A stretch of 63,779 nucleotides of DNA, the filler included, from Octopus bimaculoides (taxonomy: Eukaryota): assembly GCF_001194135.2 (NCBI RefSeq). It is 3 parts of 2 records of this genome, joined end to end, with 100 filler letters (N's around TTAATTAATTAA, not from the genome) between each part and the next. Parts side by side here need not be neighbours in the genome. Positions count along the whole stretch, not along the records: positions 1 to 29,226 come from NC_068982.1; 2 more parts are not named here. The stretch is one strand, 5' to 3'. The notes below the pieces were generated by a model. That model did no database searches. It worked only from the letters and a program-made list of their open reading frames with translations, and was not told the DNA's origin. This document shows, in pieces, positions 1 to 28,269 of this stretch (position 1 is the first letter of the stretch; each line of letters begins with the position of its first letter). Position numbers and translations under genes: made by a program.

Positions 1-2854
1 ATATGGGTACAGGACATCACCGACAGTAAACAACATGAAATACGAAAACAAATGAATTCAATACGCAAATAACGAGAGAAACAAATGGAAAACAGGACAT
101 GTAACATAAAGAACGATCCTTCATGAGTTGTCGGATGTCTATCTACTCCACATTTCGAGCATTGAACGACAGTATGACTCTTCGAAGACAGTTGCTCCCA
201 TAAATATCAACATAAAATTTTGGATTTATTGGGGGTCAAAGTTGGGAACAAAAACAGGACAATGGAGACATACAAGGAAACCGAACGCAAACAAACATGG
301 AGGGTCGTTAGACCAGAACGAGGGTAAAATAACGAACGCTGGAAAAATATTTTCTTTAATAGGGGAAAAGATAGAAGAGAGAGATAGAATACGTCCAGTC
401 CTTAGGACAGTCACGTGAGGAAAAGAAAGATGAACGATGGTCACGTTTGAGCAACGAGAGAGAGAAAAAGAGAAAGGCAGAGAGATAGAAAACGGTGACG
501 GGGAGAAAAAGATTAGGGAGACCGTTTACTATCTGTCTGTCTGTCTCTCTCCGTTTCTCCCTATATATATATAATGCACTGTTCCGTGACAAAAAAGTGC
601 TCCATCAGGAGAGAGAAAAGTATTTACTTAAAGGACACAATACATGTCTTTAAGTGCTACTAATAGTTTCATATGTTGAGAAATATCTCAAACATATTCA
701 TCAAGCACAAGCCACATATAAGGAATCTTAAAAAATAAAATAAGGAAAGAAATGTGGAAAAGCTGAGTTGACGCGGGAAGAGCTATTCTAAGAGTGCGTT
801 CTACTTCATCTTCGAAACGCCTAGTTTAGAATAGAGGCAGCTGATGAAGGAAAAATTCCATATTTGGCTTGTCTGTTTTCCTATGTGTTCATTCTGTTGT
901 CCGAAAAAAGTTCGCTTTTTGTGCTTTGTTTATGTTCCCGTTCCTTTTTTGTCCACGTTTTTTTGACGTCCTGTACCCGGATATGCATCTATATATATAC
1001 ATGTAGATGTAGGTATGTACATATATGTATGTATATATGTATATGCTCACATATCATTTGTNNNNNNNNNNNNNNNNNNNNNNNNNNNNNNNNNNNNNNN
1101 NNNNNNNNNNNNNNNNNNNNNNNNNNNNNNNNNNNNNNNNNNNNNNNNNNNNNNNNNNNNNNNNNNNNNNNNNNNNNNNNNNNNNNNNNNNNNNNNNNNN
1201 NNNNNNNNNNNNNNNNNNNNNNNNNNNNNNNNNNNNNNNNNNNNNNNNNNNNNNNNNNNNNNNNNNNNNNNNNNNNNNNNNNNNNNNNNNNNNNNNNNNN
1301 NNNNNNNNNNNNNNNNNNNNNNNNNNNNNNNNNNNNNNNNNNNNNNNNNNNNNNNNNNNNNNNNNNNNNNNNNNNNNNNNNNNNNNNNNNNNNNNNNNNN
1401 NTATATAAGTTTGCATGTGGCTATGTATCTGTACATGCATGTATGCATGTAACCATGCACATGTGGATCTGTATTTTTTTACTTACGTTTGTGTGCATAT
1501 ACATATGTTTGATTATCTACATTTGTGTATTTGCATATATCTAGAAACGTTAAACTTCTGCAATGAATTATATGTTTTTACAGTGCAATTAACGGTTTGT
1601 AGTTGTAATATCCTGTTTGAGCGTGTTCTTTCTCAAGATTGGTGCCGAGGCAATAAGTTACACTTGACTTAGAATTGAAGATAATTTCGTTTCACACTCT
1701 TATTTTGAAGACAACTAAGCAGCATAATTTTCAAATTGATAATATGAATAAAACTCCGCTTTTAATCTCTTTGGAAACAGTACGGTTGACATAAAAAGAA
1801 AACAGTTTGTGTGAGGATCATAGAATATGAACGAATTCATTTTACTGTGATATTTGTTTGTATGAAAGTAGGATTTAAGTCAATGTTATTTAGGATGAGC
1901 GTATTGTAAAAGGTGGAGAAATTGCTATCTGTAGGGTTAGTTTACATTCCGAAGGGTGGATGGAGGAAAATGGTATGATGCTGTAATTAAGTCAAGATGG
2001 CCTTTGTATATGTGAAATCAATCCTAATAATGTAGTCAGTTCCGGGAACACAAAACAGAAAATGTGAAAATGAAACAAGCAATGATACCAGTCAACCCAA
2101 ACATTTTTACTTGAATATTTGCTCGGGAAACCATTAAAGGAAAAGAGATGTCAGACGTGGATGACATGTACATCTTCGGACACAAAAGAACTGACGAAAG
2201 GTAGAAACTTGAAGAAGCTATGCTTGTTTCTTGAGATATTGGGCGTAGAGAATGATTAAATGATATTCCGGCTGAAAAAGTGATAAAGGATTTCCTGAAG
2301 ACGGGAATATGACCCAAGATAGATAGGCTTATGGTTCAGCCTGTGACTAAGATGAGAAGGAACAAGAAAATAATACAGAAGTAATACCAGCATATGGAAC
2401 ATAGATAAAATTTGATATAGATGTAACGGGAGAATCTTTTTTTTTTTTGTGCCAGTAACGAAGATCTGAATTTAGTGGATTTTAACTGGATTTTAGGTTA
2501 TAATTTTTTGTTATTAATTGAAATTTCATAATTATGCTTTGCCTACTTGGATTTAATTTGCCTTTGTGTCTTCTCTGATATTACAATATACATTTTAGCC
2601 ATATATTATTTATGCAGTAGCTTTCCGTAATCACGTTCGTAATTTATTTTCAAGATAAATGCAGCCAACGAGGCGACTAATTTAATTGTCTCACACAACT
2701 AATAACAGGAAATATAGAAAGTCATTTTGAATAAGATCTCTTGTTCTGGTATTTTCATTGTTTTTCAGGTAGATTTGTATTCTAAACTTTTGTATCAATA
2801 CGTCCCTGTAAATCATGGTGTACGACTTGCATACTTGCACTTCTTTTGGTTTTA

Positions 2855-3227
2855 TGTTCTGCGTTCAAATACCAACGCTGTCGACTTTGCTTTTTATCTT
2901 TTAAGCATCACTGAAGTAAGTACCTGTCGAGCACTGTGGTCAGTGTCATCGGCTATCCCCTCCCCTAAAATTTCAGGCCTTTTGCCTACAGTAGAAAAGA
3001 TTATTATAACTATTAAGGTGGCGAGCTGGCTGAATCGTTAGCAGGTCGGACAAAATGCTCAACGGCATTTCATCCGTCTTCACGTTCTGTGTTTAAATTT
3101 TGCAGAGGTCGACTTCGCCTTTTATCCTTTCGGTGTCAATAAAATAAGTGCCAGTTGAACATTGGTGTCAATGTAATCAACTCAACCACTTCTTCGAAAT
3201 TGCTCGCCTTGTGCCAAAATTCGAAAC

Positions 3228-3275
<48 letters not shown>

Positions 3276-3484
3276 GGTAGTGAGCTGGCAGAATCGTTAG
3301 CACGCCAGATGAAATGCTTATCGGTTTCCGTCCGTCTTTACATTCTAAATTCAAATTCTGCCGGGGTTTACTATGCCTGTCATACTTTCGGGGTCGATAA
3401 AATAAGTACCAGTCGAGAACTGGGGGTCAGTGTAATCGACTACCCTCCTCCCTCGAAATTTCAGGCATTGTACCTATCGAAAGG

Positions 3485-3530
<46 letters not shown>
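2855..3530 (+). mobile_element. Tandem trio of SINE family B copies, followed by ATT-type tails (long after copies 2 and 3, short after copy 1)
   Basis: Three head-to-tail homologous units (~2855-3000 5'-truncated, 3015-3230, 3274-3485). Shared head aagg(t/c)ggcgagctggcagaatcgttagca, B-box-like gagttcaaattc and core catcctttcggggtcgataaaataagtaccag. Homologous copies recur across the window. Confidence 0.8.
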
Positions 3531-6500: not shown

Positions 6501-7812
6501 ATACTTGAACCATTTTTGTCCTGTGTAAAAAAGCAACAACAAACAAAACACACACACACACACACAAAGAAAAAAGTTGTGACAATTAGATTAGATAGAA
6601 AAATAAGCATCCATGTTCCCCTTGTAAAGTTTGTCTATTCGATTCATCAAATGTACCCGTTCATTAAACAAACTACTCAACCTGTAAGAACGCTTTTATA
6701 TGATTACTTTTAACACTTACAATAGAGATGGGCGTCAAAGCTGGGTAGTCAACTTTGAAGAATTTTTTTTTTCCTTTTGCTCTCAGTTTTCTGATTCATA
6801 TCGAAAGCTCTGTCGTTGCTTTCATCTTCTCGGGATCGATATTGCCTTTCATTTCTCTAGAATCGATAAATTAAGTACCTGCATGGTATTAGGATATATT
6901 CAATCAACTATATTCCCCGAACAAAATAGCCCTTGTTCCTTTACAAAATAAAATAAAAAATATCAAGAAATAAAACATATATGCACAAACAAACACACAA
7001 AAAACTAAAATAAAATGCTCTTGTTAGATAGAAATTGGTTCCTAAAGTGAATAAAAAGCAGAACTCTGATCCTAACATTAGGCAGTTGTAATTTTGTTGC
7101 CGATGAAATTCGAATGTGTCTATTGTGATAACACAGTTGTGTAGTTCTGTTAATTAAGAAACGTAATTCAGTCTAGTTTTGGTTCTTATATCAGAATAAT
7201 ATAACTGTTGAAATTAACTTTAGCACGATACAGTTTTGTTGCTTGGGTAGCACTATCATTCCTCCGATGCTTTGTTGGTAACAGAGTCGTTAGAAAGTCG
7301 GGCAAAATGCCTTACTGTATTTGTTCTGAATCGCTGTGCTGTGAGTTCAAATTTCGACGAGATCAAATTTGTTTTCAATCGTTTCGAAACCGATAAAATA
7401 TTACCAGTCCAAAGCAGTGTGTTGGCGGGATTATAAGAATGTCAGACAGGATGTTGTTTGTTCTGGCTCTTTGCGTTTTGCGTTCAAAATCCCGCTGTGA
7501 TCTATCTACATGGATGGTAGCCTTTATCCGTGAATATTTTACTTAATTTTTTTCAATACCTTAAAAATGTGACGGAAACTTAAAAACAAAAAAATTGTTT
7601 TTAGTTTTCATAAAGTTAGTAAACAGTCTTAGAATTTGCAATTCGATTTTTAAGAACAATGTTTTCTTACTGTGTATCTTTATAGACAAATAAATGACAA
7701 GCAATATTCGTAGCCACTTTAACATGGCTGTCTGTTCGAGCGGATTCTACTGCGATTTTTTTAACCCCAAGAGGACATCTCCTCTGGCTGGTTAACGATG
7801 CACAGCTGTATC

Positions 7813-7927
7813 CGATAAAATTGCGAGCAGGGGAGCGAACCCCTACCACCTCTTAGCGATGGGACCGGTAGACCAGTCCTGGTTTCGGACTATTTCTGTC
7901 ACTCCTCAGTACTGGACACCTCGTCTG
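7813..7927 (-). repeat. Left inverted terminal repeat (~115 bp) of the Tx1 cassette, carrying a hammerhead motif
   Basis: Reverse complement of 9311-9424 with scattered substitutions (attgcgagcaggggagcgaacccctacca...gtagaccagtcctggtttcg...cagtactg...tcgtctg). Confidence 0.9.
7858..7925 (-). ncRNA. Type I hammerhead ribozyme copy (predicted, more degenerate)
   Basis: Minus strand reads ccagta CTGAGGA gtgacagaaatagtcc GAAA ccag ga ctgg TC taccgg. Core and stem III are intact; stem II is weak. Confidence 0.6.
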
Positions 7928-9305
7928 TTTCTGCATATGCGGATGACGTTACCATCACTGTGTCTGTTGAAGCTCAGCTACATTGTGTACAGAATGCGAT
8001 CAACGGACATGAGGCGGCGGCAGGGGCAAAAATTAGCAAGGACAAGTCCATCGGCTTNNNNNNNNNNNNNNNNNNNNNNNNNNNNNNNNNNNNNNNNNNN
8101 NNNNNNNNNNNNNNNNNNNNNNNNNNNNNNNNNNNNNNNNNNNNNNNNNNNNNNNNNNNNNNNNNNNNNNNNNNNNNNNNNNNNNNNNNNNNNNNNNNNN
8201 NNNNNNNNNNNNNNNNNNNNNNNNNNNNNNNNNNNNNNNNNNNNNNNNNNNNNNNNNNNNNNNNNNNNNNNNNNNNNNNNNNNNNNNNNNNNNNNNNNNN
8301 NNNNNNNNNNNNNNNNNNGGGTTAGGGATGCCGTAGCTGATGATGCACAGACATGTGCCGAGGCACCTCTGGCTCTACCTGGAAGGTGAACAGGTGTGGA
8401 ATCCGCTGGCAGAGACGTTCTTTCCGCGACGGGCCTCCTTGGCAAAAAGAGTGCCGACAGGCACTTGGGCTAATCTACAAGGCGGGCAAGGCCAGCAGCA
8501 GGAGTACTACCTCGATACTCTATAGCGGGATGGTAGAGATCAAGAGGGATGACGTCTTAGGAGAGACTCTGGGGCTCGATGGGGGTAGTTAGCCAACCTG
8601 TACAAAAGAACTTTCAGGCCGGGACACCTGGATAACTGACCTGGCAGTGCTATAGAAGTGCTTTACCTGTTCGTGATAAACTGTCTAGGCATGGAATGTC
8701 TGTGCCACCGGCATGTCCAAGGTGCGGGCAGGACGAGGAAACCGTTCTGCACGCCCTTGTTCAGTGTCCAGAGCTTTCGGGCTTGATAATTTACGCAGAA
8801 CAAGTGCTGTCACATCTGGGAAGAGTACAGCTATCAGCTGAGTCCATGATTAAGATTGCGCTGCCACCCGGACTGTCAAAGGAAGGTAAGGGGTATTTCT
8901 CATGCACAGTTGCAGTACTGAAAGATTGTATATGGAAATCTAGAATGAAAGGTGTCGCGACAGGAACATTCATCTCCGGCCCTGGCTTGCTATACTACTT
9001 CAGATATCTGAAGAGCAAGATAGGGCTGGAGAAAAGACGCCTATCGCGAAGTGTATACGGGAAAAGATGGAAAGATGTGGAAAGAAAGTTAGGGGTGAAT
9101 GACCCTGCGTAATTTCAACCATAGTAAACTAGTACGGTGCAGCCGGTGGACTTCACGGCCAAGTTTTAAAATTTTTTGAATCATATTTTAAATACATCAT
9201 CATATTTTTAAAATTCATTTATGAACCCATGAACACTTTTTCTTTGTGATGTCCTGTATTGTTCTCTCTATGTCCTGTAAATACTATCATAATAAAGAAT
9301 ATATC
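7927..9305 (+). mobile_element. 5'-truncated L1/Tx1-clade LINE (RT C-terminal half, CCHC knuckle, 3' UTR), degenerate and interrupted by a gap
   Basis: Translates VSAYADDVTITVS...AGAKISKDKS from 7927 (RT YADD motif), GLGMP...HLWLYLEGEQVW after the gap, and CPRCGQDEETVLHALVQCP...KDCIWKSR...KRW in ORF 8696-9112. AATAAA at ~9292. Confidence 0.85.
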
Positions 9306-9310
9306 TCTAG

Positions 9311-9424
9311 CAGACGAGATGTCAGTACTGAAGAGTGATAGAAATAGCTCGAAACCAGGACTGGTCTACTGATCCCGTCACTAGGAGATGGTAGGGGTTC
9401 GCTCCCCTGCTCGCAATGTTATCG
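9311..9424 (+). repeat. Right inverted terminal repeat (~114 bp) of the Tx1 cassette
   Basis: Direct alignment with the reverse complement of 7813-7927. Confidence 0.9.
9313..9379 (+). ncRNA. Type I hammerhead ribozyme (predicted)
   Basis: Stem I tcagta(9322-27)/tactga(9367-72), core CTGAAGA, stem II gtgata-GAAA-tagctc (2 mismatches), GAAA, stem III ccag-ga-ctgg, GTC cleavage triplet (9364-66). Stem I extends through a bulge (gacg/cgtc). Confidence 0.75.
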
Positions 9425-9586
9425 AATGACAAGCATTTTAAGTCTACTCTTTGACAAGTTTTACAAACCAAGGTTTAATTTCTTTTCTTTCTCCAAAGCA
9501 ATTCACATTACCGAATCAATATACAAAAGTGAATTGCTTCTTTTTATGCATGCGCGCGCACACACATAGACACAGACAGACAGACA

Positions 9587-9624
<38 letters not shown>

Positions 9625-10419
9625 CGGTATATTGTTGTTCAGGAAAGCCAGGTGTTATTCTCACTTGTGGTCGGAATACTTTCTAGGCAATTTAATTGCA
9701 TCCAGGGAAAGCAAGTAATCCAGCCCCAGATTGGTTCCATAGTAGGAGTACGACTCAAAAGATGATTTATAAATGAAATTAAGCTTTATCAACATTTCTG
9801 AACCTCCTTCACCATATTCTGCTCGATTGATAGTAAAAAGGATTTATCATCCACATTTTATTTTCCGAGTTCTGTGGATACGTTTGAAGGAAACGTTTCA
9901 AAATTTCTAAAGAGCAGCCCACTTAGGCCATTAGTCTCTCCTGGAACATGGGCTCCACATCAGGTTCTTTTTCTTCCCACTCATACTCACTCATTCAAGA
10001 AGTTCCTTTACAAAAGCTACATTGCTACAGTGTGATCCTTTTCTCGTGGTTTCTATTTTCTCAAAGACATCGAAAGATGTCACCTCCTTAATGAAATGAA
10101 TTTGTCATTATGAAATGACAAATTGAGATGATTCTAACGTTTAAAAAAACATGTAACGCAAGTTGGATAACCAAATATCATTGATTTAGTGCCAAATTTC
10201 TCTGTAAAGTAGACAAGATATTTCAGTTTTTAGGGACAATGATGGTGAAACTAGAGTTACCCAATGAAACTCATCATAATAAGCTGAAGTCACTAGAATA
10301 ACTCTACAGGAAAAAACAGGATACTTCTACAAGAAAATAGTGCAATCTAATGTTGAATTGCCTAAAATCTCCTTAATAATTTGCTTAATGCAAAGAAGGG
10401 CTGGTAGACTGAAGTACTG

Positions 10420-27140: not shown

Positions 27141-28269
27141 AATAATTATGATAATTATAAATATTATAATGATAACAATAAAAGTAATGATTTCAAATTT
27201 TGGTACAAGGCCAGCAAGTTTGTGGAAGTGAGTACGTCGATGTAATCGACCCCAATGTTCAAATGGTATTTATTTTNNNNNNNNNNNNNNNNNNNNNNNN
27301 NNNNNNNNNNNNNNNNNNNNNNNNNNNNNNNNNNNNNNNNNNNNNNNNGTGTGTGTGTGTGCGTGCATGTGTGTGTGTGTGTTGGTGTTTTGATGAGGCT
27401 GCCGACGTGCTCAAAGAGATATTTGCAGCTGTGGAGTAATACGAAATATTTGTTGTTTGTAGATGTATTCAGTTTATGATTATCGTTTGTTCTGTTCGAG
27501 CACGTGCACGAAGGTGTATCAATTTATGAATATCTGCGCATATACGTGTGTCGGTTATGTTGATGGCTTTTGTGTGTGCAGTGTTTCTGCAATGTTTAAG
27601 CGACGGATGTTGAGGCTGCGGCAAAGGGAAAAAAGAAAGAGAATAAAGGAAAGAGAAAGACGAAGTGTTTGAGAAAGTTGTAAGAGGAGAAAGAGAGGAA
27701 AATGACTGAAAAAAAAAAAAAAAAGTAAGTGGAGCATAGCTGCCGATCAATAGTGACATTTTATTGACACACTACAGCATACATTCCAAAGATAGGTGCG
27801 TGAAGTACGGAATTCACTTACAATGCGTTCCTCTCTATAAATTAATCTGGCAGAGATCAATAGAAGGAACGGTAAAAATAATCAAAATAGAGACAAGGCA
27901 ATATTGAAATTGTAGAACATCTTTTAAGACGAAAATAATTTTCCTGTTCATCTATTGTTTCTTTCTTATTTTAAAACTGTTAATCTCGCTTTAATTATAC
28001 CATCGAAACGATTAAATAGTGCAATGTTTATTGCTTAGTTACGGCTTACTTTTGATACTTTTAATATATAATTTTATGTCTTGCTTATTGATGATGTTCT
28101 TGTTCTTGTCTTTTTAGTTTTGTTTCTAATCTTTTTTTTTTAATTATTTTTAATGCTGCGTTATTTTATAATTACTCTTCATTTAGGTTACTGATGACAT
28201 ATTCATGTTACTGCCGTTGTCATTGCTATGTGCGTTTATATATGTGTGTGTATTATATACATATACGTA

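What the first reader, a model, noticed from the sequence alone, without database searches (positions are those of the whole stretch)
7813..9424. L1/Tx1 retroelement fragment bracketed by inverted hammerhead-ribozyme terminal repeats
Seen: a ~115-bp repeat sits directly after the LINE 3' UTR and AATAAA (9311-9424). Its reverse complement (7813-7927) abuts the exact 5' truncation point, just before the YADD codons. Both copies carry a hammerhead fold. Established: hammerhead-bearing terminal repeats and an inverted copy at the 5' truncation are hallmarks of Penelope-like elements and retrozymes. Non-LTR LINEs with ribozymes usually use 5' HDV-like ones, and L1 twin-priming inverts sequence without duplicating the 3' end. 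Inference: this is either a Tx1 lineage with its own hammerhead terminal repeat (for example processing tandem transcripts), or a Tx1 RNA trans-mobilised by Penelope machinery via a pLTR/retrozyme tag. I do not know of this arrangement being described.
Basis: partly seen in the sequence, partly recalled or inferred. Interest (0 to 1): 0.85.

Follow-up and report, generated by a model that had tools for sequence, protein, structure and literature searches.

The report
LINE fragment between inverted hammerhead repeats
A dead, 5'-truncated L1-like retrotransposon piece sits between two inverted 118-base repeats that each carry a hammerhead-ribozyme-like motif, a layout that best matches the known way Penelope-like retroelements frame and copy foreign sequence, so it is an interesting fossil but probably not a new kind of element.

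Summary
The repeat is real. Arms 7810-7927 (-) and 9311-9427 (+) align over 118 nt at 88% identity and are the only copies in 29 kb. Their 5' "heads" face inward. One head abuts the LINE truncation point, 8 nt before the YADD codons. The other lies 14 nt after the LINE AATAAA.

Both arms keep every invariant hammerhead core base and have helices I and III. Helix II is weak, Rfam scores are far below threshold, and the canonical fold is not the energy minimum. The motif is credible but decayed and unproven.

The assembly gap lies inside one colinear LINE ORF2. Two relatives span it, and about 320 nt are expected against 261 N.

An 11-bp direct repeat (7693-7703 and 9425-9435) may bound a single insertion, 7704-9424. 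Under that reading the left arm has a 106-nt extension.

Related LINE copies show no hammerhead after their 3' UTR.

Inverted hammerhead-bearing terminal repeats, a target-site duplication, an extension on one arm and an unrelated passenger are the published Penelope-like (pLTR) capture architecture. I favour that reading (confidence about 0.5) over a Tx1 lineage with its own hammerhead tail (about 0.12).

The source genome could not be searched, so family membership remains untested.

The parts
7693..7703 (.). Candidate left target-site duplication, AATGACAAGCA.
   Evidence: It is an exact 11-nt direct repeat of 9425-9435 (family D3). Shuffles give p about 8e-4 for a match of 11 nt or more at this anchoring. 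One caution: a 13-mer that spans the right arm end and this repeat also occurs at 18875.
7704..7809 (-). A 106-nt extension downstream (in the repeat's own sense) of the left arm. It belongs to the insertion only if the target-site duplication is real.
   Evidence: It lies between the candidate duplication and the left arm. The right arm has no counterpart. The 224-nt unit 7704-7927 (-) folds with z = -3.4. It contains a weak second 'head' motif, CAGAGGAGATGTCC (p 0.05-0.12).
7810..7927 (-). Left arm of the inverted repeat. The hammerhead-bearing unit is sense on the minus strand, and its 5' head at 7927 abuts the LINE truncation point.
   Evidence: 118 columns at 88% identity to 9311-9427. 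Differences between the arms are 12 transitions, 1 transversion and 1 indel.
7863..7917 (-). Hammerhead-like motif in the left arm. It has CUGAGGA, helix II of 4 bp with a bulged U, GAAA, helix III of 4 bp, and GUC. The predicted cut is between 7871 and 7870.
   Evidence: Descriptor hit. Helix I is interrupted (3 bp, a mismatch, then 2 bp). The canonical fold scores -4.3 against a minimum free energy of -16.7 kcal/mol. There is no Rfam hammerhead hit.
7830..7843 (-). GGGGUUCGCUCCCC hairpin downstream of the hammerhead, left arm.
   Evidence: Identical in both arms. Predicted as a hairpin in every fold.
7928..8057 (+). L1-like LINE ORF2 fragment covering the reverse-transcriptase motif YADD (7936-7947) and downstream sequence, up to the assembly gap.
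   Evidence: RVT_1 E = 2.3e-4, 21.4 bits, below the 29.6 cut-off because the piece is short. It aligns to relatives L002 and L006. No upstream reverse-transcriptase sequence exists elsewhere in the window, so the 5' truncation is real.
8058..8318 (.). Assembly gap inside the LINE ORF2.
   Evidence: Relatives L002 and L006 span it. About 320 nt (about 107 codons) are expected, against 261 N.
8319..9112 (+). LINE ORF2 C-terminal part. 8319-8695 is broken by stops and frameshifts. 8696-9112 is the last open stretch (138 aa) and includes the CCHC zf-RVT region (about 8636-8773).
   Evidence: Three-frame translation. zf-RVT scores 39 bits against a 27.5 cut-off. Relatives are 55-66% identical at the amino-acid level and 69-77% at the nucleotide level. 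A relative's thumb region matches human L1 ORF2p at E about 2e-4.
9113..9296 (+). LINE 3' UTR ending in AATAAA (9291-9296). A conserved block at about 9132-9160 sits just after the stop codon.
   Evidence: Aligns to the L001 and L003 3' UTRs. Homology to L001 ends at AATAAA plus about 8 nt. No poly(A) follows.
9297..9310 (+). A 14-nt spacer, GAATATATCTCTAG, of uncertain origin. It could be the LINE tail, the head of the unit, or filler.
9311..9424 (+). Right arm of the inverted repeat, with the hammerhead-bearing unit on the same strand as the LINE. Bases 9425-9427 are ambiguous between the arm and the target-site duplication.
9321..9373 (+). Hammerhead-like motif in the right arm. It has helix I of 7 bp, CUGAAGA, a weak helix II, GAAA, helix III of 4 bp, and GUC. 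The predicted cut is 9366/9367.
   Evidence: Descriptor hit. The minimum-free-energy fold is a three-way junction but with helix II shifted in register. The canonical fold scores -5.0 against -10.6 kcal/mol. Rfam RAGATH-1-hammerhead gives 16.3 bits, E = 1.5, in the correct register.
9394..9407 (+). GGGGUUCGCUCCCC hairpin, right arm. It ends 17 nt before the insertion end.
9425..9435 (.). Candidate right target-site duplication, AATGACAAGCA.

Best explanation
Bases 7704-9424 are the fossil of a Penelope-like (PLE) or retrozyme-type retroelement insertion. The L1-like LINE piece inside it is a passenger.

The 118-nt unit is a type-I hammerhead followed by a GC hairpin. It behaves as a pseudo-LTR-like terminal repeat. 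One copy lies in sense at the 3' end. A second copy lies head-to-head at the 5' end and carries a 106-nt extension.

Inferred mechanism:
1. Both strands of a staggered, AT-rich target were nicked.
2. Each nick primed reverse transcription of a hammerhead-unit RNA, starting downstream of the hairpin. This gave two converging cDNAs that each ran to the head of the unit (CAGACGAG).
3. The 1.4-kb LINE 3' portion was then included in one of two ways. Either the reverse transcriptase jumped end-to-end from the unit's head onto a LINE RNA during the same event, or a LINE cDNA later filled a break at the palindromic centre of a head-to-head repeat pair.
4. Repair left an 8-11-bp target-site duplication.

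Shown here: the repeat, its orientation, its sharp junctions with the LINE, the hammerhead core, the candidate duplication, and the dead state of the LINE ORF.

Inferred, not shown: the enzyme responsible, one event versus two, and ribozyme activity.
For: - The inverted repeat is real and confined to this locus.
- Both heads face inward and start at the same base, CAGACGAG. One is 0-3 nt from the LINE truncation point. The other is 14 nt after the LINE AATAAA, with no poly(A) between.
- There is no homology past either end of the arms.
- The hammerhead core is present in both arms and rare by chance: 0.007-0.03 expected per window.
- Helix I of 6-7 bp and helix II of 4 bp with a bulged 5' base match the published description of metazoan and PLE hammerheads (PMC4209133).
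- An 11-bp direct repeat flanks 7704-9424, p about 8e-4 in shuffles.
- One arm has a structured 3' extension.
- The LINE is dead and truncated. The two related LINE 3' ends that could be read lack any hammerhead.
- The unit is not an abundant dispersed repeat here, whereas a SINE-like family has at least 5 copies in the same 29 kb.
- Literature: PLE inserts commonly carry an inverted 5'-truncated copy, hammerhead-bearing pLTRs and a tail on one end (PMC8557442).
- Literature: 5'-truncated copies flanked by inverted pLTRs, and unrelated sequences captured between pLTRs with 8-10-bp duplications, are described in rotifers (PMC3846280).
- Literature: PLE protein nicks and extends both strands, and starts reverse transcription internally in a stem-loop downstream of the hammerhead (PMC11167929).
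Against: - No PLE reverse transcriptase or GIY-YIG ORF is linked to the unit. No autonomous PLE from this genome could be examined, so calling the unit a pLTR rests on analogy.
- No other copy of the unit was found in any searchable collection.
- Metazoan PLE hammerheads usually have a minimal helix III or none. Here helix III is 4 bp, closer to retrozyme-type hammerheads.
- The extension is 106 nt, against the published 30-40 nt.
- The duplication is weakened by a 13-mer that spans the arm/duplication boundary and recurs at 18875.
- Rfam does not call a hammerhead, and the canonical fold is energetically disfavoured in both arms.
- An assembly gap lies in the middle of the structure.
Confidence: 0.5

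Rival explanations
1. The hammerhead unit is the native 3' module of this L1/Tx1-like LINE lineage, for example to trim read-through or tandem transcripts. The inverted 5' copy arose when the LINE's own machinery primed a second cDNA from the other DNA strand.
For: The unit lies in the same sense as the LINE, only 14 nt past the end of the LINE 3' UTR, with no poly(A) between them. The candidate duplication encloses both the LINE and the arms. L1-type reverse transcriptases are known to make 5' inversions (twin priming; established knowledge).
Against: The two related LINE 3' ends that could be read (L001, L003) diverge from the window at or before AATAAA and contain no hammerhead. AATAAA lies upstream of the unit, so normal transcripts would end before it. 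The most conserved LINE 3' UTR block lies just after the stop codon. Twin priming inverts sequence from upstream, not the 3' terminus. The left arm ends exactly at the head of the unit rather than at a random point in a LINE-plus-unit RNA. No paper in the library links hammerheads with Tx1.
Confidence: 0.12
2. The unit is a separate SINE-like or retrozyme-like RNA mobilised by the LINE's own reverse transcriptase. The enzyme started on the unit RNA, ran to its 5' end and jumped onto its own mRNA, giving a chimeric copy. The inverted arm came from a second priming on the other strand.
For: Both junctions lie at the head of the unit, as expected for run-off and end-to-end template jumps. The LINE segment begins at or near its natural 3' end. 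The literature leaves open whether LINEs or PLEs mobilise metazoan retrozymes (PMC7229834).
Against: The unit's 3' end shares nothing with the LINE 3' UTR. Both-strand priming is documented for PLE protein, not for L1 or R2. Later work ties animal retrozymes to PLE pLTRs (bioRxiv 10.64898/2026.07.22.740005). This is a single locus.
Confidence: 0.12
3. Coincidence or a DNA-level structure. The unit is an independent dispersed repeat (SINE or MITE end) that landed twice next to an older LINE fragment, or the arms are terminal inverted repeats of a DNA transposon that captured a LINE piece.
For: The arms share both their inner and outer boundaries within alignment resolution, like a discrete module. 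The genome is repeat-rich.
Against: The window has only these two copies, and both abut the ends of the LINE within 14 nt. No direct repeat lies immediately outside the arms, as a DNA transposon with terminal inverted repeats would leave. The heads, not the tails, face the passenger. Two independent hits at both LINE ends are very unlikely.
Confidence: 0.08
4. Assembly artefact. The contig left of the gap (inverted arm plus the reverse-transcriptase piece) and the contig right of it were wrongly joined, or a chimeric contig created the arm/LINE junction.
For: A 261-N gap lies between the two halves, and the scaffold has ten gaps in 29 kb. PLE-type inverted structures are known to trouble short-read assemblies.
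Against: The two halves are colinear parts of one ORF2, with a gap size within about 60 nt of that expected from relatives. The arms are 12% diverged, so they are not a collapsed duplicate. The candidate duplication pairs the two outer flanks.
Confidence: 0.08

Closest known systems
Penelope-like element insertion units with pseudo-LTRs, including pLTR-framed capture of unrelated sequence (Adineta vaga Pen families, PMC3846280; general architecture, PMC8557442)
   Same: Hammerhead motif inside the terminal repeat. Head-to-head inverted repeat at the 5' end of a 5'-truncated body. Target-site duplication of about 8-11 bp. Extension on only one inverted arm. AT-rich target. Body unrelated to the repeats.
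   Different: No PLE ORF is linked. The passenger is a LINE fragment rather than a host gene. The extension is 106 nt, not about 31-40. There is no direct pLTR pair. Helix III is 4 bp rather than minimal.
Metazoan non-LTR retrozymes (type-I hammerhead repeats of 170-400 nt; PMC7229834)
   Same: Type-I hammerhead with helix I of about 6 bp and helix II of about 4 bp. A highly structured unit of about 224 nt if the extension is counted. Larger target-site duplications than plant retrozymes.
   Different: There is no tandem array at this locus. The two copies are inverted. No circular-RNA evidence is available.
L1 twin-priming 5' inversions and L1 chimeric retrocopies made by template switching (established L1 biology)
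   Same: 5'-truncated LINE with an inverted segment at its 5' end inside one target-site duplication. Sharp junctions with no or minimal microhomology.
   Different: The inverted segment duplicates the 3'-terminal unit instead of upstream LINE sequence. There is no poly(A). The non-LINE part is at the 3' end, not the 5' end.
Ribozyme-bearing LINEs and SINE-like elements (HDV-like ribozymes at the 5' end of R2 and L1Tc; hammerhead in schistosome SINE-like elements; review PMC6765202)
   Same: A self-cleaving ribozyme motif physically joined to non-LTR retroelement sequence.
   Different: The known LINE ribozymes are HDV-like and sit at the 5' end. Here a hammerhead-like motif lies 3' of the LINE and is duplicated in inverted orientation.

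Membership tests
Hammerhead ribozyme, type I (Rfam RF00163 / clan CL00010) | Invariant core CUGANGA ... GAAA ... U-H at the three-way junction | tested here: met
   Both arms have CUGA(A/G)GA, GAAA and GUC in the right order and spacing. These are the only two such sites in 29 kb, with 0.007-0.03 expected.
Hammerhead ribozyme, type I (Rfam RF00163 / clan CL00010) | Three helices (I, II, III) closing the core | tested here: inconclusive
   Helix I is 7 bp in the right arm and interrupted in the left. Helix III is 4 bp in both. Helix II is weak, at 0.0 and -0.9 kcal/mol. The canonical fold scores -5.0 and -4.3 against minimum free energies of -10.6 and -16.7.
Hammerhead ribozyme, type I (Rfam RF00163 / clan CL00010) | Score at or above the Rfam gathering threshold | tested here: not met
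   Hammerhead_1 gives 11.7 bits against 34 and is mis-registered. RAGATH-1-hammerhead gives 16.3 against 56.3. The left arm has no hit.
Hammerhead ribozyme, type I (Rfam RF00163 / clan CL00010) | Self-cleavage after H17 | not testable with these tools
   This needs in vitro transcription or mapping of RNA ends at 9366/9367.
Penelope-like element insertion (pLTR architecture) | Terminal repeats (direct and/or inverted) that carry a hammerhead motif | tested here: met
   Inverted 118-nt arms, each with the motif.
Penelope-like element insertion (pLTR architecture) | Target-site duplication of variable length around the whole unit | tested here: inconclusive
   An 11-bp repeat at 7693-7703 and 9425-9435, p about 8e-4 by shuffles. 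A boundary-spanning 13-mer recurs at 18875.
Penelope-like element insertion (pLTR architecture) | Optional 30-40-bp tail at the 3' end of one repeat | tested here: inconclusive
   One arm has an extension, but it is 106 nt.
Penelope-like element insertion (pLTR architecture) | ORF with a telomerase-like reverse transcriptase and a GIY-YIG endonuclease | tested here: not met
   The body between the arms is an L1-like ORF2 fragment with RVT_1 and zf-RVT. This is compatible only with a captured or non-autonomous unit.
Penelope-like element insertion (pLTR architecture) | Sequence identity between the repeat and the pLTR of an autonomous PLE in the same genome | not testable with these tools
   The source genome is in no searchable collection. 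All scans for the unit were negative.
Metazoan non-LTR retrozyme | Head-to-tail tandem repeats of 170-400 nt, each with a type-I hammerhead | tested here: not met
   There is no tandem array at the locus. Only a weak second head motif is present in the extension.
L1-superfamily LINE (L1/Tx1) | ORF2 with a reverse-transcriptase domain and a C-terminal CCHC zf-RVT region | tested here: met
   zf-RVT scores 39 bits against a 27.5 cut-off. The RVT_1 fragment scores 21.4 bits, E = 2.3e-4. A relative's thumb region matches human L1 ORF2p at E about 2e-4.
L1-superfamily LINE (L1/Tx1) | Placement in the Tx1 clade specifically (phylogeny, target specificity) | not tested
   Only about 350 codons of a broken ORF are available, and no phylogeny was made.
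L1 twin-priming inversion | The inverted 5' segment derives from LINE sequence upstream of the direct segment | tested here: not met
   The inverted segment is a copy of the unit that lies 3' of the LINE. No LINE sequence is inverted.
DNA transposon or MITE with terminal inverted repeats | Short target-site duplication immediately outside both terminal inverted repeats | tested here: not met
   The flanks ...CAGCTGT|arm and arm|GACAAGC share no direct repeat.

The most novel reading that the evidence does not exclude
The hammerhead unit and this L1/Tx1-like LINE are functional partners. Either the LINE lineage has acquired a hammerhead-bearing 3' module of its own, or its reverse transcriptase mobilises hammerhead (retrozyme-like) RNAs and this chimera is the footprint of a template jump between the two RNAs. 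That would be the first physical link between a LINE and hammerhead retroelements. It would bear on the open question of what mobilises animal retrozymes.
Probability: 0.2. Interest if true: 0.7.

Novelty: new member of a known kind. Interest (0 to 1): 0.35.

Why it matters
If the favoured reading is right, this locus is one more example, in a different animal lineage and with a LINE as passenger, of hammerhead-bearing pseudo-LTRs acting as the cis-signals that let Penelope-type machinery copy foreign sequence. Until now that behaviour has been documented mainly in rotifers.

It also flags a 118-nt hammerhead unit that annotation pipelines and Rfam thresholds would miss.

If one of the minority readings is right, it would tie a LINE to hammerhead retroelements. 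It would also give a concrete test of whether LINEs or PLEs mobilise animal retrozymes.

As it stands this is a single decayed copy in a gapped draft assembly. Its value is as a lead for a genome-wide survey, not as a result in itself.

Tried and rejected
Searches that led nowhere:
- **Other copies of the unit.** I ran exact and gapped DNA patterns against metagenome contigs, viral contigs and prokaryotic genomes. I also ran a peptide search with the one open frame across the unit. All found nothing.
- **The window's own LINE ORF.** It is not on record in the gene-position index, so the source genome could not be reached.
- **An SRA accession in the literature.** The only match was an unrelated prefix.
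- **Rfam on the whole window.** At E up to 1 it returned only microsatellite-driven microRNA look-alikes, all far below threshold.
- **tRNA.** ARAGORN found none, so the tRNA-like look of the GGGGTTCGCTCCCC hairpin is not a tRNA-derived SINE head.

Ideas considered and rejected:
- **Classical twin priming.** The inverted piece is not upstream LINE sequence.
- **A LINE split by an antisense SINE insertion.** No upstream reverse-transcriptase sequence lies to the left of the arm.
- **A DNA transposon with terminal inverted repeats.** No adjacent target-site duplication is present.
- **A snap-back copy of the right flank.** The extension does not match the right flank in reverse.
- **Longer arms hidden by indels.** The extension alignments are no better than shuffles.
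- **A second hammerhead in the 106-nt extension.** Only a weak match to the head of the unit is present.

Not done: a six-frame Pfam scan of the whole window for PLE domains. It could not have changed the main question, because no further copy of the unit exists in the window.
Full report
**The repeat and its junctions.** The sequence at 7500-9800 contains an inverted repeat. Its ungapped core is 7810-7914 and 9323-9427 (105 nt, 89% complementary). With one single-base indel it extends to 7810-7927 and 9311-9427 (118 columns, 88.1%).

Two conserved blocks of 20 and 28 nt occur only at these two places in the 29-kb piece, with none expected in shuffles. Alignment of the sequences beyond either end of the arms is no better than shuffled controls. 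The repeat is therefore sharply bounded.

Read in the sense of the motif it carries, each arm begins with CAGACGAG, and these heads face each other across about 1.4 kb. The left head (7927) lies 0-3 nt from the first base that aligns to related LINE copies, and 8 nt before the YADD codons at 7936-7947. The right head (9311) lies 14 nt after the LINE's AATAAA (9291-9296), with no poly(A) in between.

**The gap.** The gap at 8058-8318 was tested first, as asked.
- The 130 nt before it encode ...VSAYADDVTITV...KSIG. This is a reverse-transcriptase fragment (RVT_1, E = 2.3e-4, below the cut-off because it is short).
- The sequence after it encodes the rest of an L1-like ORF2 and ends with a CCHC zf-RVT region (39 bits against a 27.5 cut-off).
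- Six related protein fragments (55-66% identity) were found in two Logan runs and two ENA metagenomes, and their contigs were fetched.
- Two of the contigs, L002 and L006, run contiguously across the region missing from the window. Pre-gap sequence aligns upstream of post-gap sequence, in the same orientation.
- L002 and the intact L004 protein predict about 320 nt missing, against 261 N. L006, which seems to carry a deletion, predicts about 80 nt fewer.

The two sides are therefore parts of one colinear LINE fragment. The frame across the gap cannot be known. It does not matter, because 8319-8695 has several stops and frameshifts.

No upstream reverse-transcriptase sequence exists elsewhere in the window, so the 5' truncation at about 7928 is genuine and not a split by a nested insertion. 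A relative's thumb region matches human L1 ORF2p (E about 2e-4). The element belongs to the L1 superfamily. Tx1 membership specifically was not tested.

**The hammerhead.** By direct reading, the right arm has:
- helix I: GUCAGUA paired with UACUGAU
- core: CUGAAGA
- helix II: a 16-nt segment
- core: GAAA
- helix III: ACCA(GGAC)UGGU
- cleavage triplet: GUC, with the cut predicted at 9366/9367

The left arm has the same core with CUGAGGA. A descriptor requiring the core, helix I and a 4-bp helix III finds only these two sites on both strands of the window. Three hundred dinucleotide shuffles give 0.03 sites (helix I of 3 bp or more) or 0.007 sites (5 bp or more) per window.

Against this:
- Helix II is weak: 0.0 kcal/mol in the right arm and -0.9 in the left, where it forms 4 bp with a bulged U.
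- Helix I is interrupted in the left arm.
- The canonical pairing scores -5.0 and -4.3 kcal/mol, against minimum free energies of -10.6 and -16.7.
- Rfam gives only sub-threshold hits.

The dimensions match the published description of metazoan type-I hammerheads: helix I of about 6 bp, helix II of about 4 bp, and a bulged base at the 5' side of helix II (PMC4209133). I conclude that this is a credible hammerhead-derived motif in two decayed copies. Activity is unproven.

The arms differ by 12 transitions, 1 transversion and 1 indel. One helix I pair differs on both sides (U-A in one arm, C-G in the other), which is weak support for structural constraint.

**Outer limits.** Directly after the right arm, AATGACAAGCA (9425-9435) repeats 7693-7703 exactly. 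With the right end anchored, shuffles of the left flank give a match of 11 nt or more in 0.08% of trials.

If this is a target-site duplication, the insertion is 7704-9424, and the left arm carries a 106-nt extension at its 3' end that the right arm lacks. The resulting 224-nt unit is strongly structured (z = -3.4).

One caution: the 13-mer TATCGAATGACAA, which spans the arm/duplication boundary, also occurs at 18875. I treat the duplication as probable, not certain. No direct repeat lies immediately outside the arms, which argues against a DNA transposon with terminal inverted repeats.

**Is the unit part of the LINE?**
- The window's 3' UTR aligns with relatives L001 and L003. Homology to L001 ends at AATAAA plus about 8 nt. 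L001 then continues for 38 nt of A/T-rich sequence with no similarity to the unit.
- L003 diverges earlier and has no hammerhead in 200 nt. A relaxed hammerhead descriptor finds nothing convincing in any related contig.
- The most conserved UTR block lies just after the stop codon (about 9132-9160). I infer that this block is a candidate for what the LINE's enzyme recognises.
- Only two relatives were informative, and both come from another species. This is evidence against a hammerhead tail native to the LINE, not proof.
- The unit is not an abundant dispersed repeat in the window, unlike a SINE-like family with (ATT)n tails that has at least five copies there. Chance juxtaposition is therefore unlikely.

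**Mechanism.** Classical L1 twin priming inverts upstream LINE sequence and cannot duplicate the 3' terminus (established knowledge). Here no LINE sequence is inverted.

The layout is the one described for Penelope-like elements:
- Insertions are often 5'-truncated, bounded by hammerhead-bearing pseudo-LTRs, and carry an inverted copy at the 5' end and an extension on one end (PMC8557442).
- In Adineta vaga, 5'-truncated copies flanked by inverted pLTRs, host genes, and other unrelated sequences framed by pLTRs with 8-10-bp duplications are documented. The authors conclude that the repeats are the cis-acting signals for mobilisation in trans (PMC3846280).
- A purified PLE protein nicks and extends both target strands. 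It starts reverse transcription internally, in a stem-loop downstream of the hammerhead. Two alternative start sites explain the tail (PMC11167929).

Mapped onto this locus, two converging cDNAs of a hammerhead-unit RNA were primed from the two strands. One started just after the GC hairpin (9424) and the other 106 nt further downstream (7704). Each ran to the head of the unit.

The LINE piece was then joined in one of two ways. Either an end-to-end template jump onto a LINE RNA occurred during the same event, or a LINE cDNA later filled a break at the palindromic centre of a head-to-head pair. Both routes explain why both junctions lie at the head of the unit and why there is no poly(A) or LINE-type duplication at the LINE's own ends. 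I cannot separate them from one locus.

**Limits.**
- No PLE ORF, no second copy of the unit and no source genome were available. All scans for the unit were negative.
- The 4-bp helix III resembles retrozyme-type hammerheads more than the minimal PLE type. A recent preprint derives animal retrozymes from PLE pLTRs, which blurs that distinction.
- The extension is longer than published tails.
- I put the PLE/retrozyme-type framing of a passenger LINE at about 0.5. The rivals are a LINE lineage with its own hammerhead tail (0.12), a chimera made by the LINE's reverse transcriptase (0.12), coincidence or a DNA-level structure (0.08), and misassembly (0.08).

**Novelty and interest.** No paper in the library links hammerheads to Tx1. 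The review of ribozymes in retrotransposons lists HDV-like ribozymes at LINE 5' ends and hammerheads in PLEs, retrozymes and schistosome SINE-like elements (PMC6765202).

The arrangement itself, pLTR-framed foreign sequence, is already described. Under the favoured reading this is a new instance of a known kind, with a LINE as the passenger. It is a useful lead for a genome-wide survey and a modestly interesting fossil. Interest: 0.35.

Noticed in passing
window 3014-3228, 3273-3474, 12993-13150 (-), 23019-23152, 27191-27276 (-): A SINE-like repeat family of about 215 nt with (ATT)n tails. It has at least five copies in 29 kb, two of them head-to-tail at 3000-3530. A similar sequence follows an (ATT)n run in the related contig L005. 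From memory it resembles cephalopod SINEs, which is unverified.
   Followed up: partly
window 21396-21506 (-), next to the gap 20683-21394: The ORF fragment MKNLITEQWKAGKSYRKISETLCIPFSTISSFIQRYK matches the Sleeping Beauty/Tc1 transposase HTH domain (PF25787, E = 4.8e-9, 36.3 bits against a cut-off of 43). It is probably a Tc1/mariner remnant cut by the gap.
   Followed up: partly
window 18875-18887: The 13-mer TATCGAATGACAA, which spans the right-arm end and the candidate target-site duplication at 9420-9432, recurs here in a partly similar context (CAATATCGAATGACAAAG). This may be chance, or a hint that the boundary sequence belongs to a repeat.
   Followed up: partly
window 7810-7927 versus 9311-9427: The two arms differ almost only by transitions (12:1), mostly G in the left arm against A in the right, and only 3 are in CpG context. 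This could reflect deamination or editing of a structured RNA or cDNA rather than neutral decay. It cannot be polarised without an outgroup.
   Followed up: partly
window about 7742-7786 (-): Inside the 106-nt extension, CAGAGGAGATGTCC... resembles the head of the unit (CAGACGAGATGTC). It may be the start of a degenerate second tandem unit. The alignment is only marginally better than shuffles (p 0.05-0.12).
   Followed up: partly
window about 9132-9160 (+): The block GTACGGTGCAGCCGGTGGACTTCACGGCC, just after the LINE stop codon, is the best-conserved part of the 3' UTR across the window, L001 and L003. It is a candidate recognition element for this LINE's reverse transcriptase.
   Followed up: no
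window 23158-23217 versus L002 2069-2127: The Logan contig that carries a related LINE copy shares a second, unrelated 60-nt repeat (85% identity) with the window. This suggests the Logan runs SRR11869391 and SRR11869384 come from an organism related to the window's source.
   Followed up: no
window 979-1061, 13190-13313, 14343-14414, 16056-16937, 18193-18817, 22241-22410: Many Rfam microRNA look-alike hits (mir-297, mir-466, mir-3149 and others) are all far below their gathering scores. They sit on (CA)n, (TA)n and (CATA)n microsatellites and are artefacts of low-complexity sequence.
   Followed up: yes
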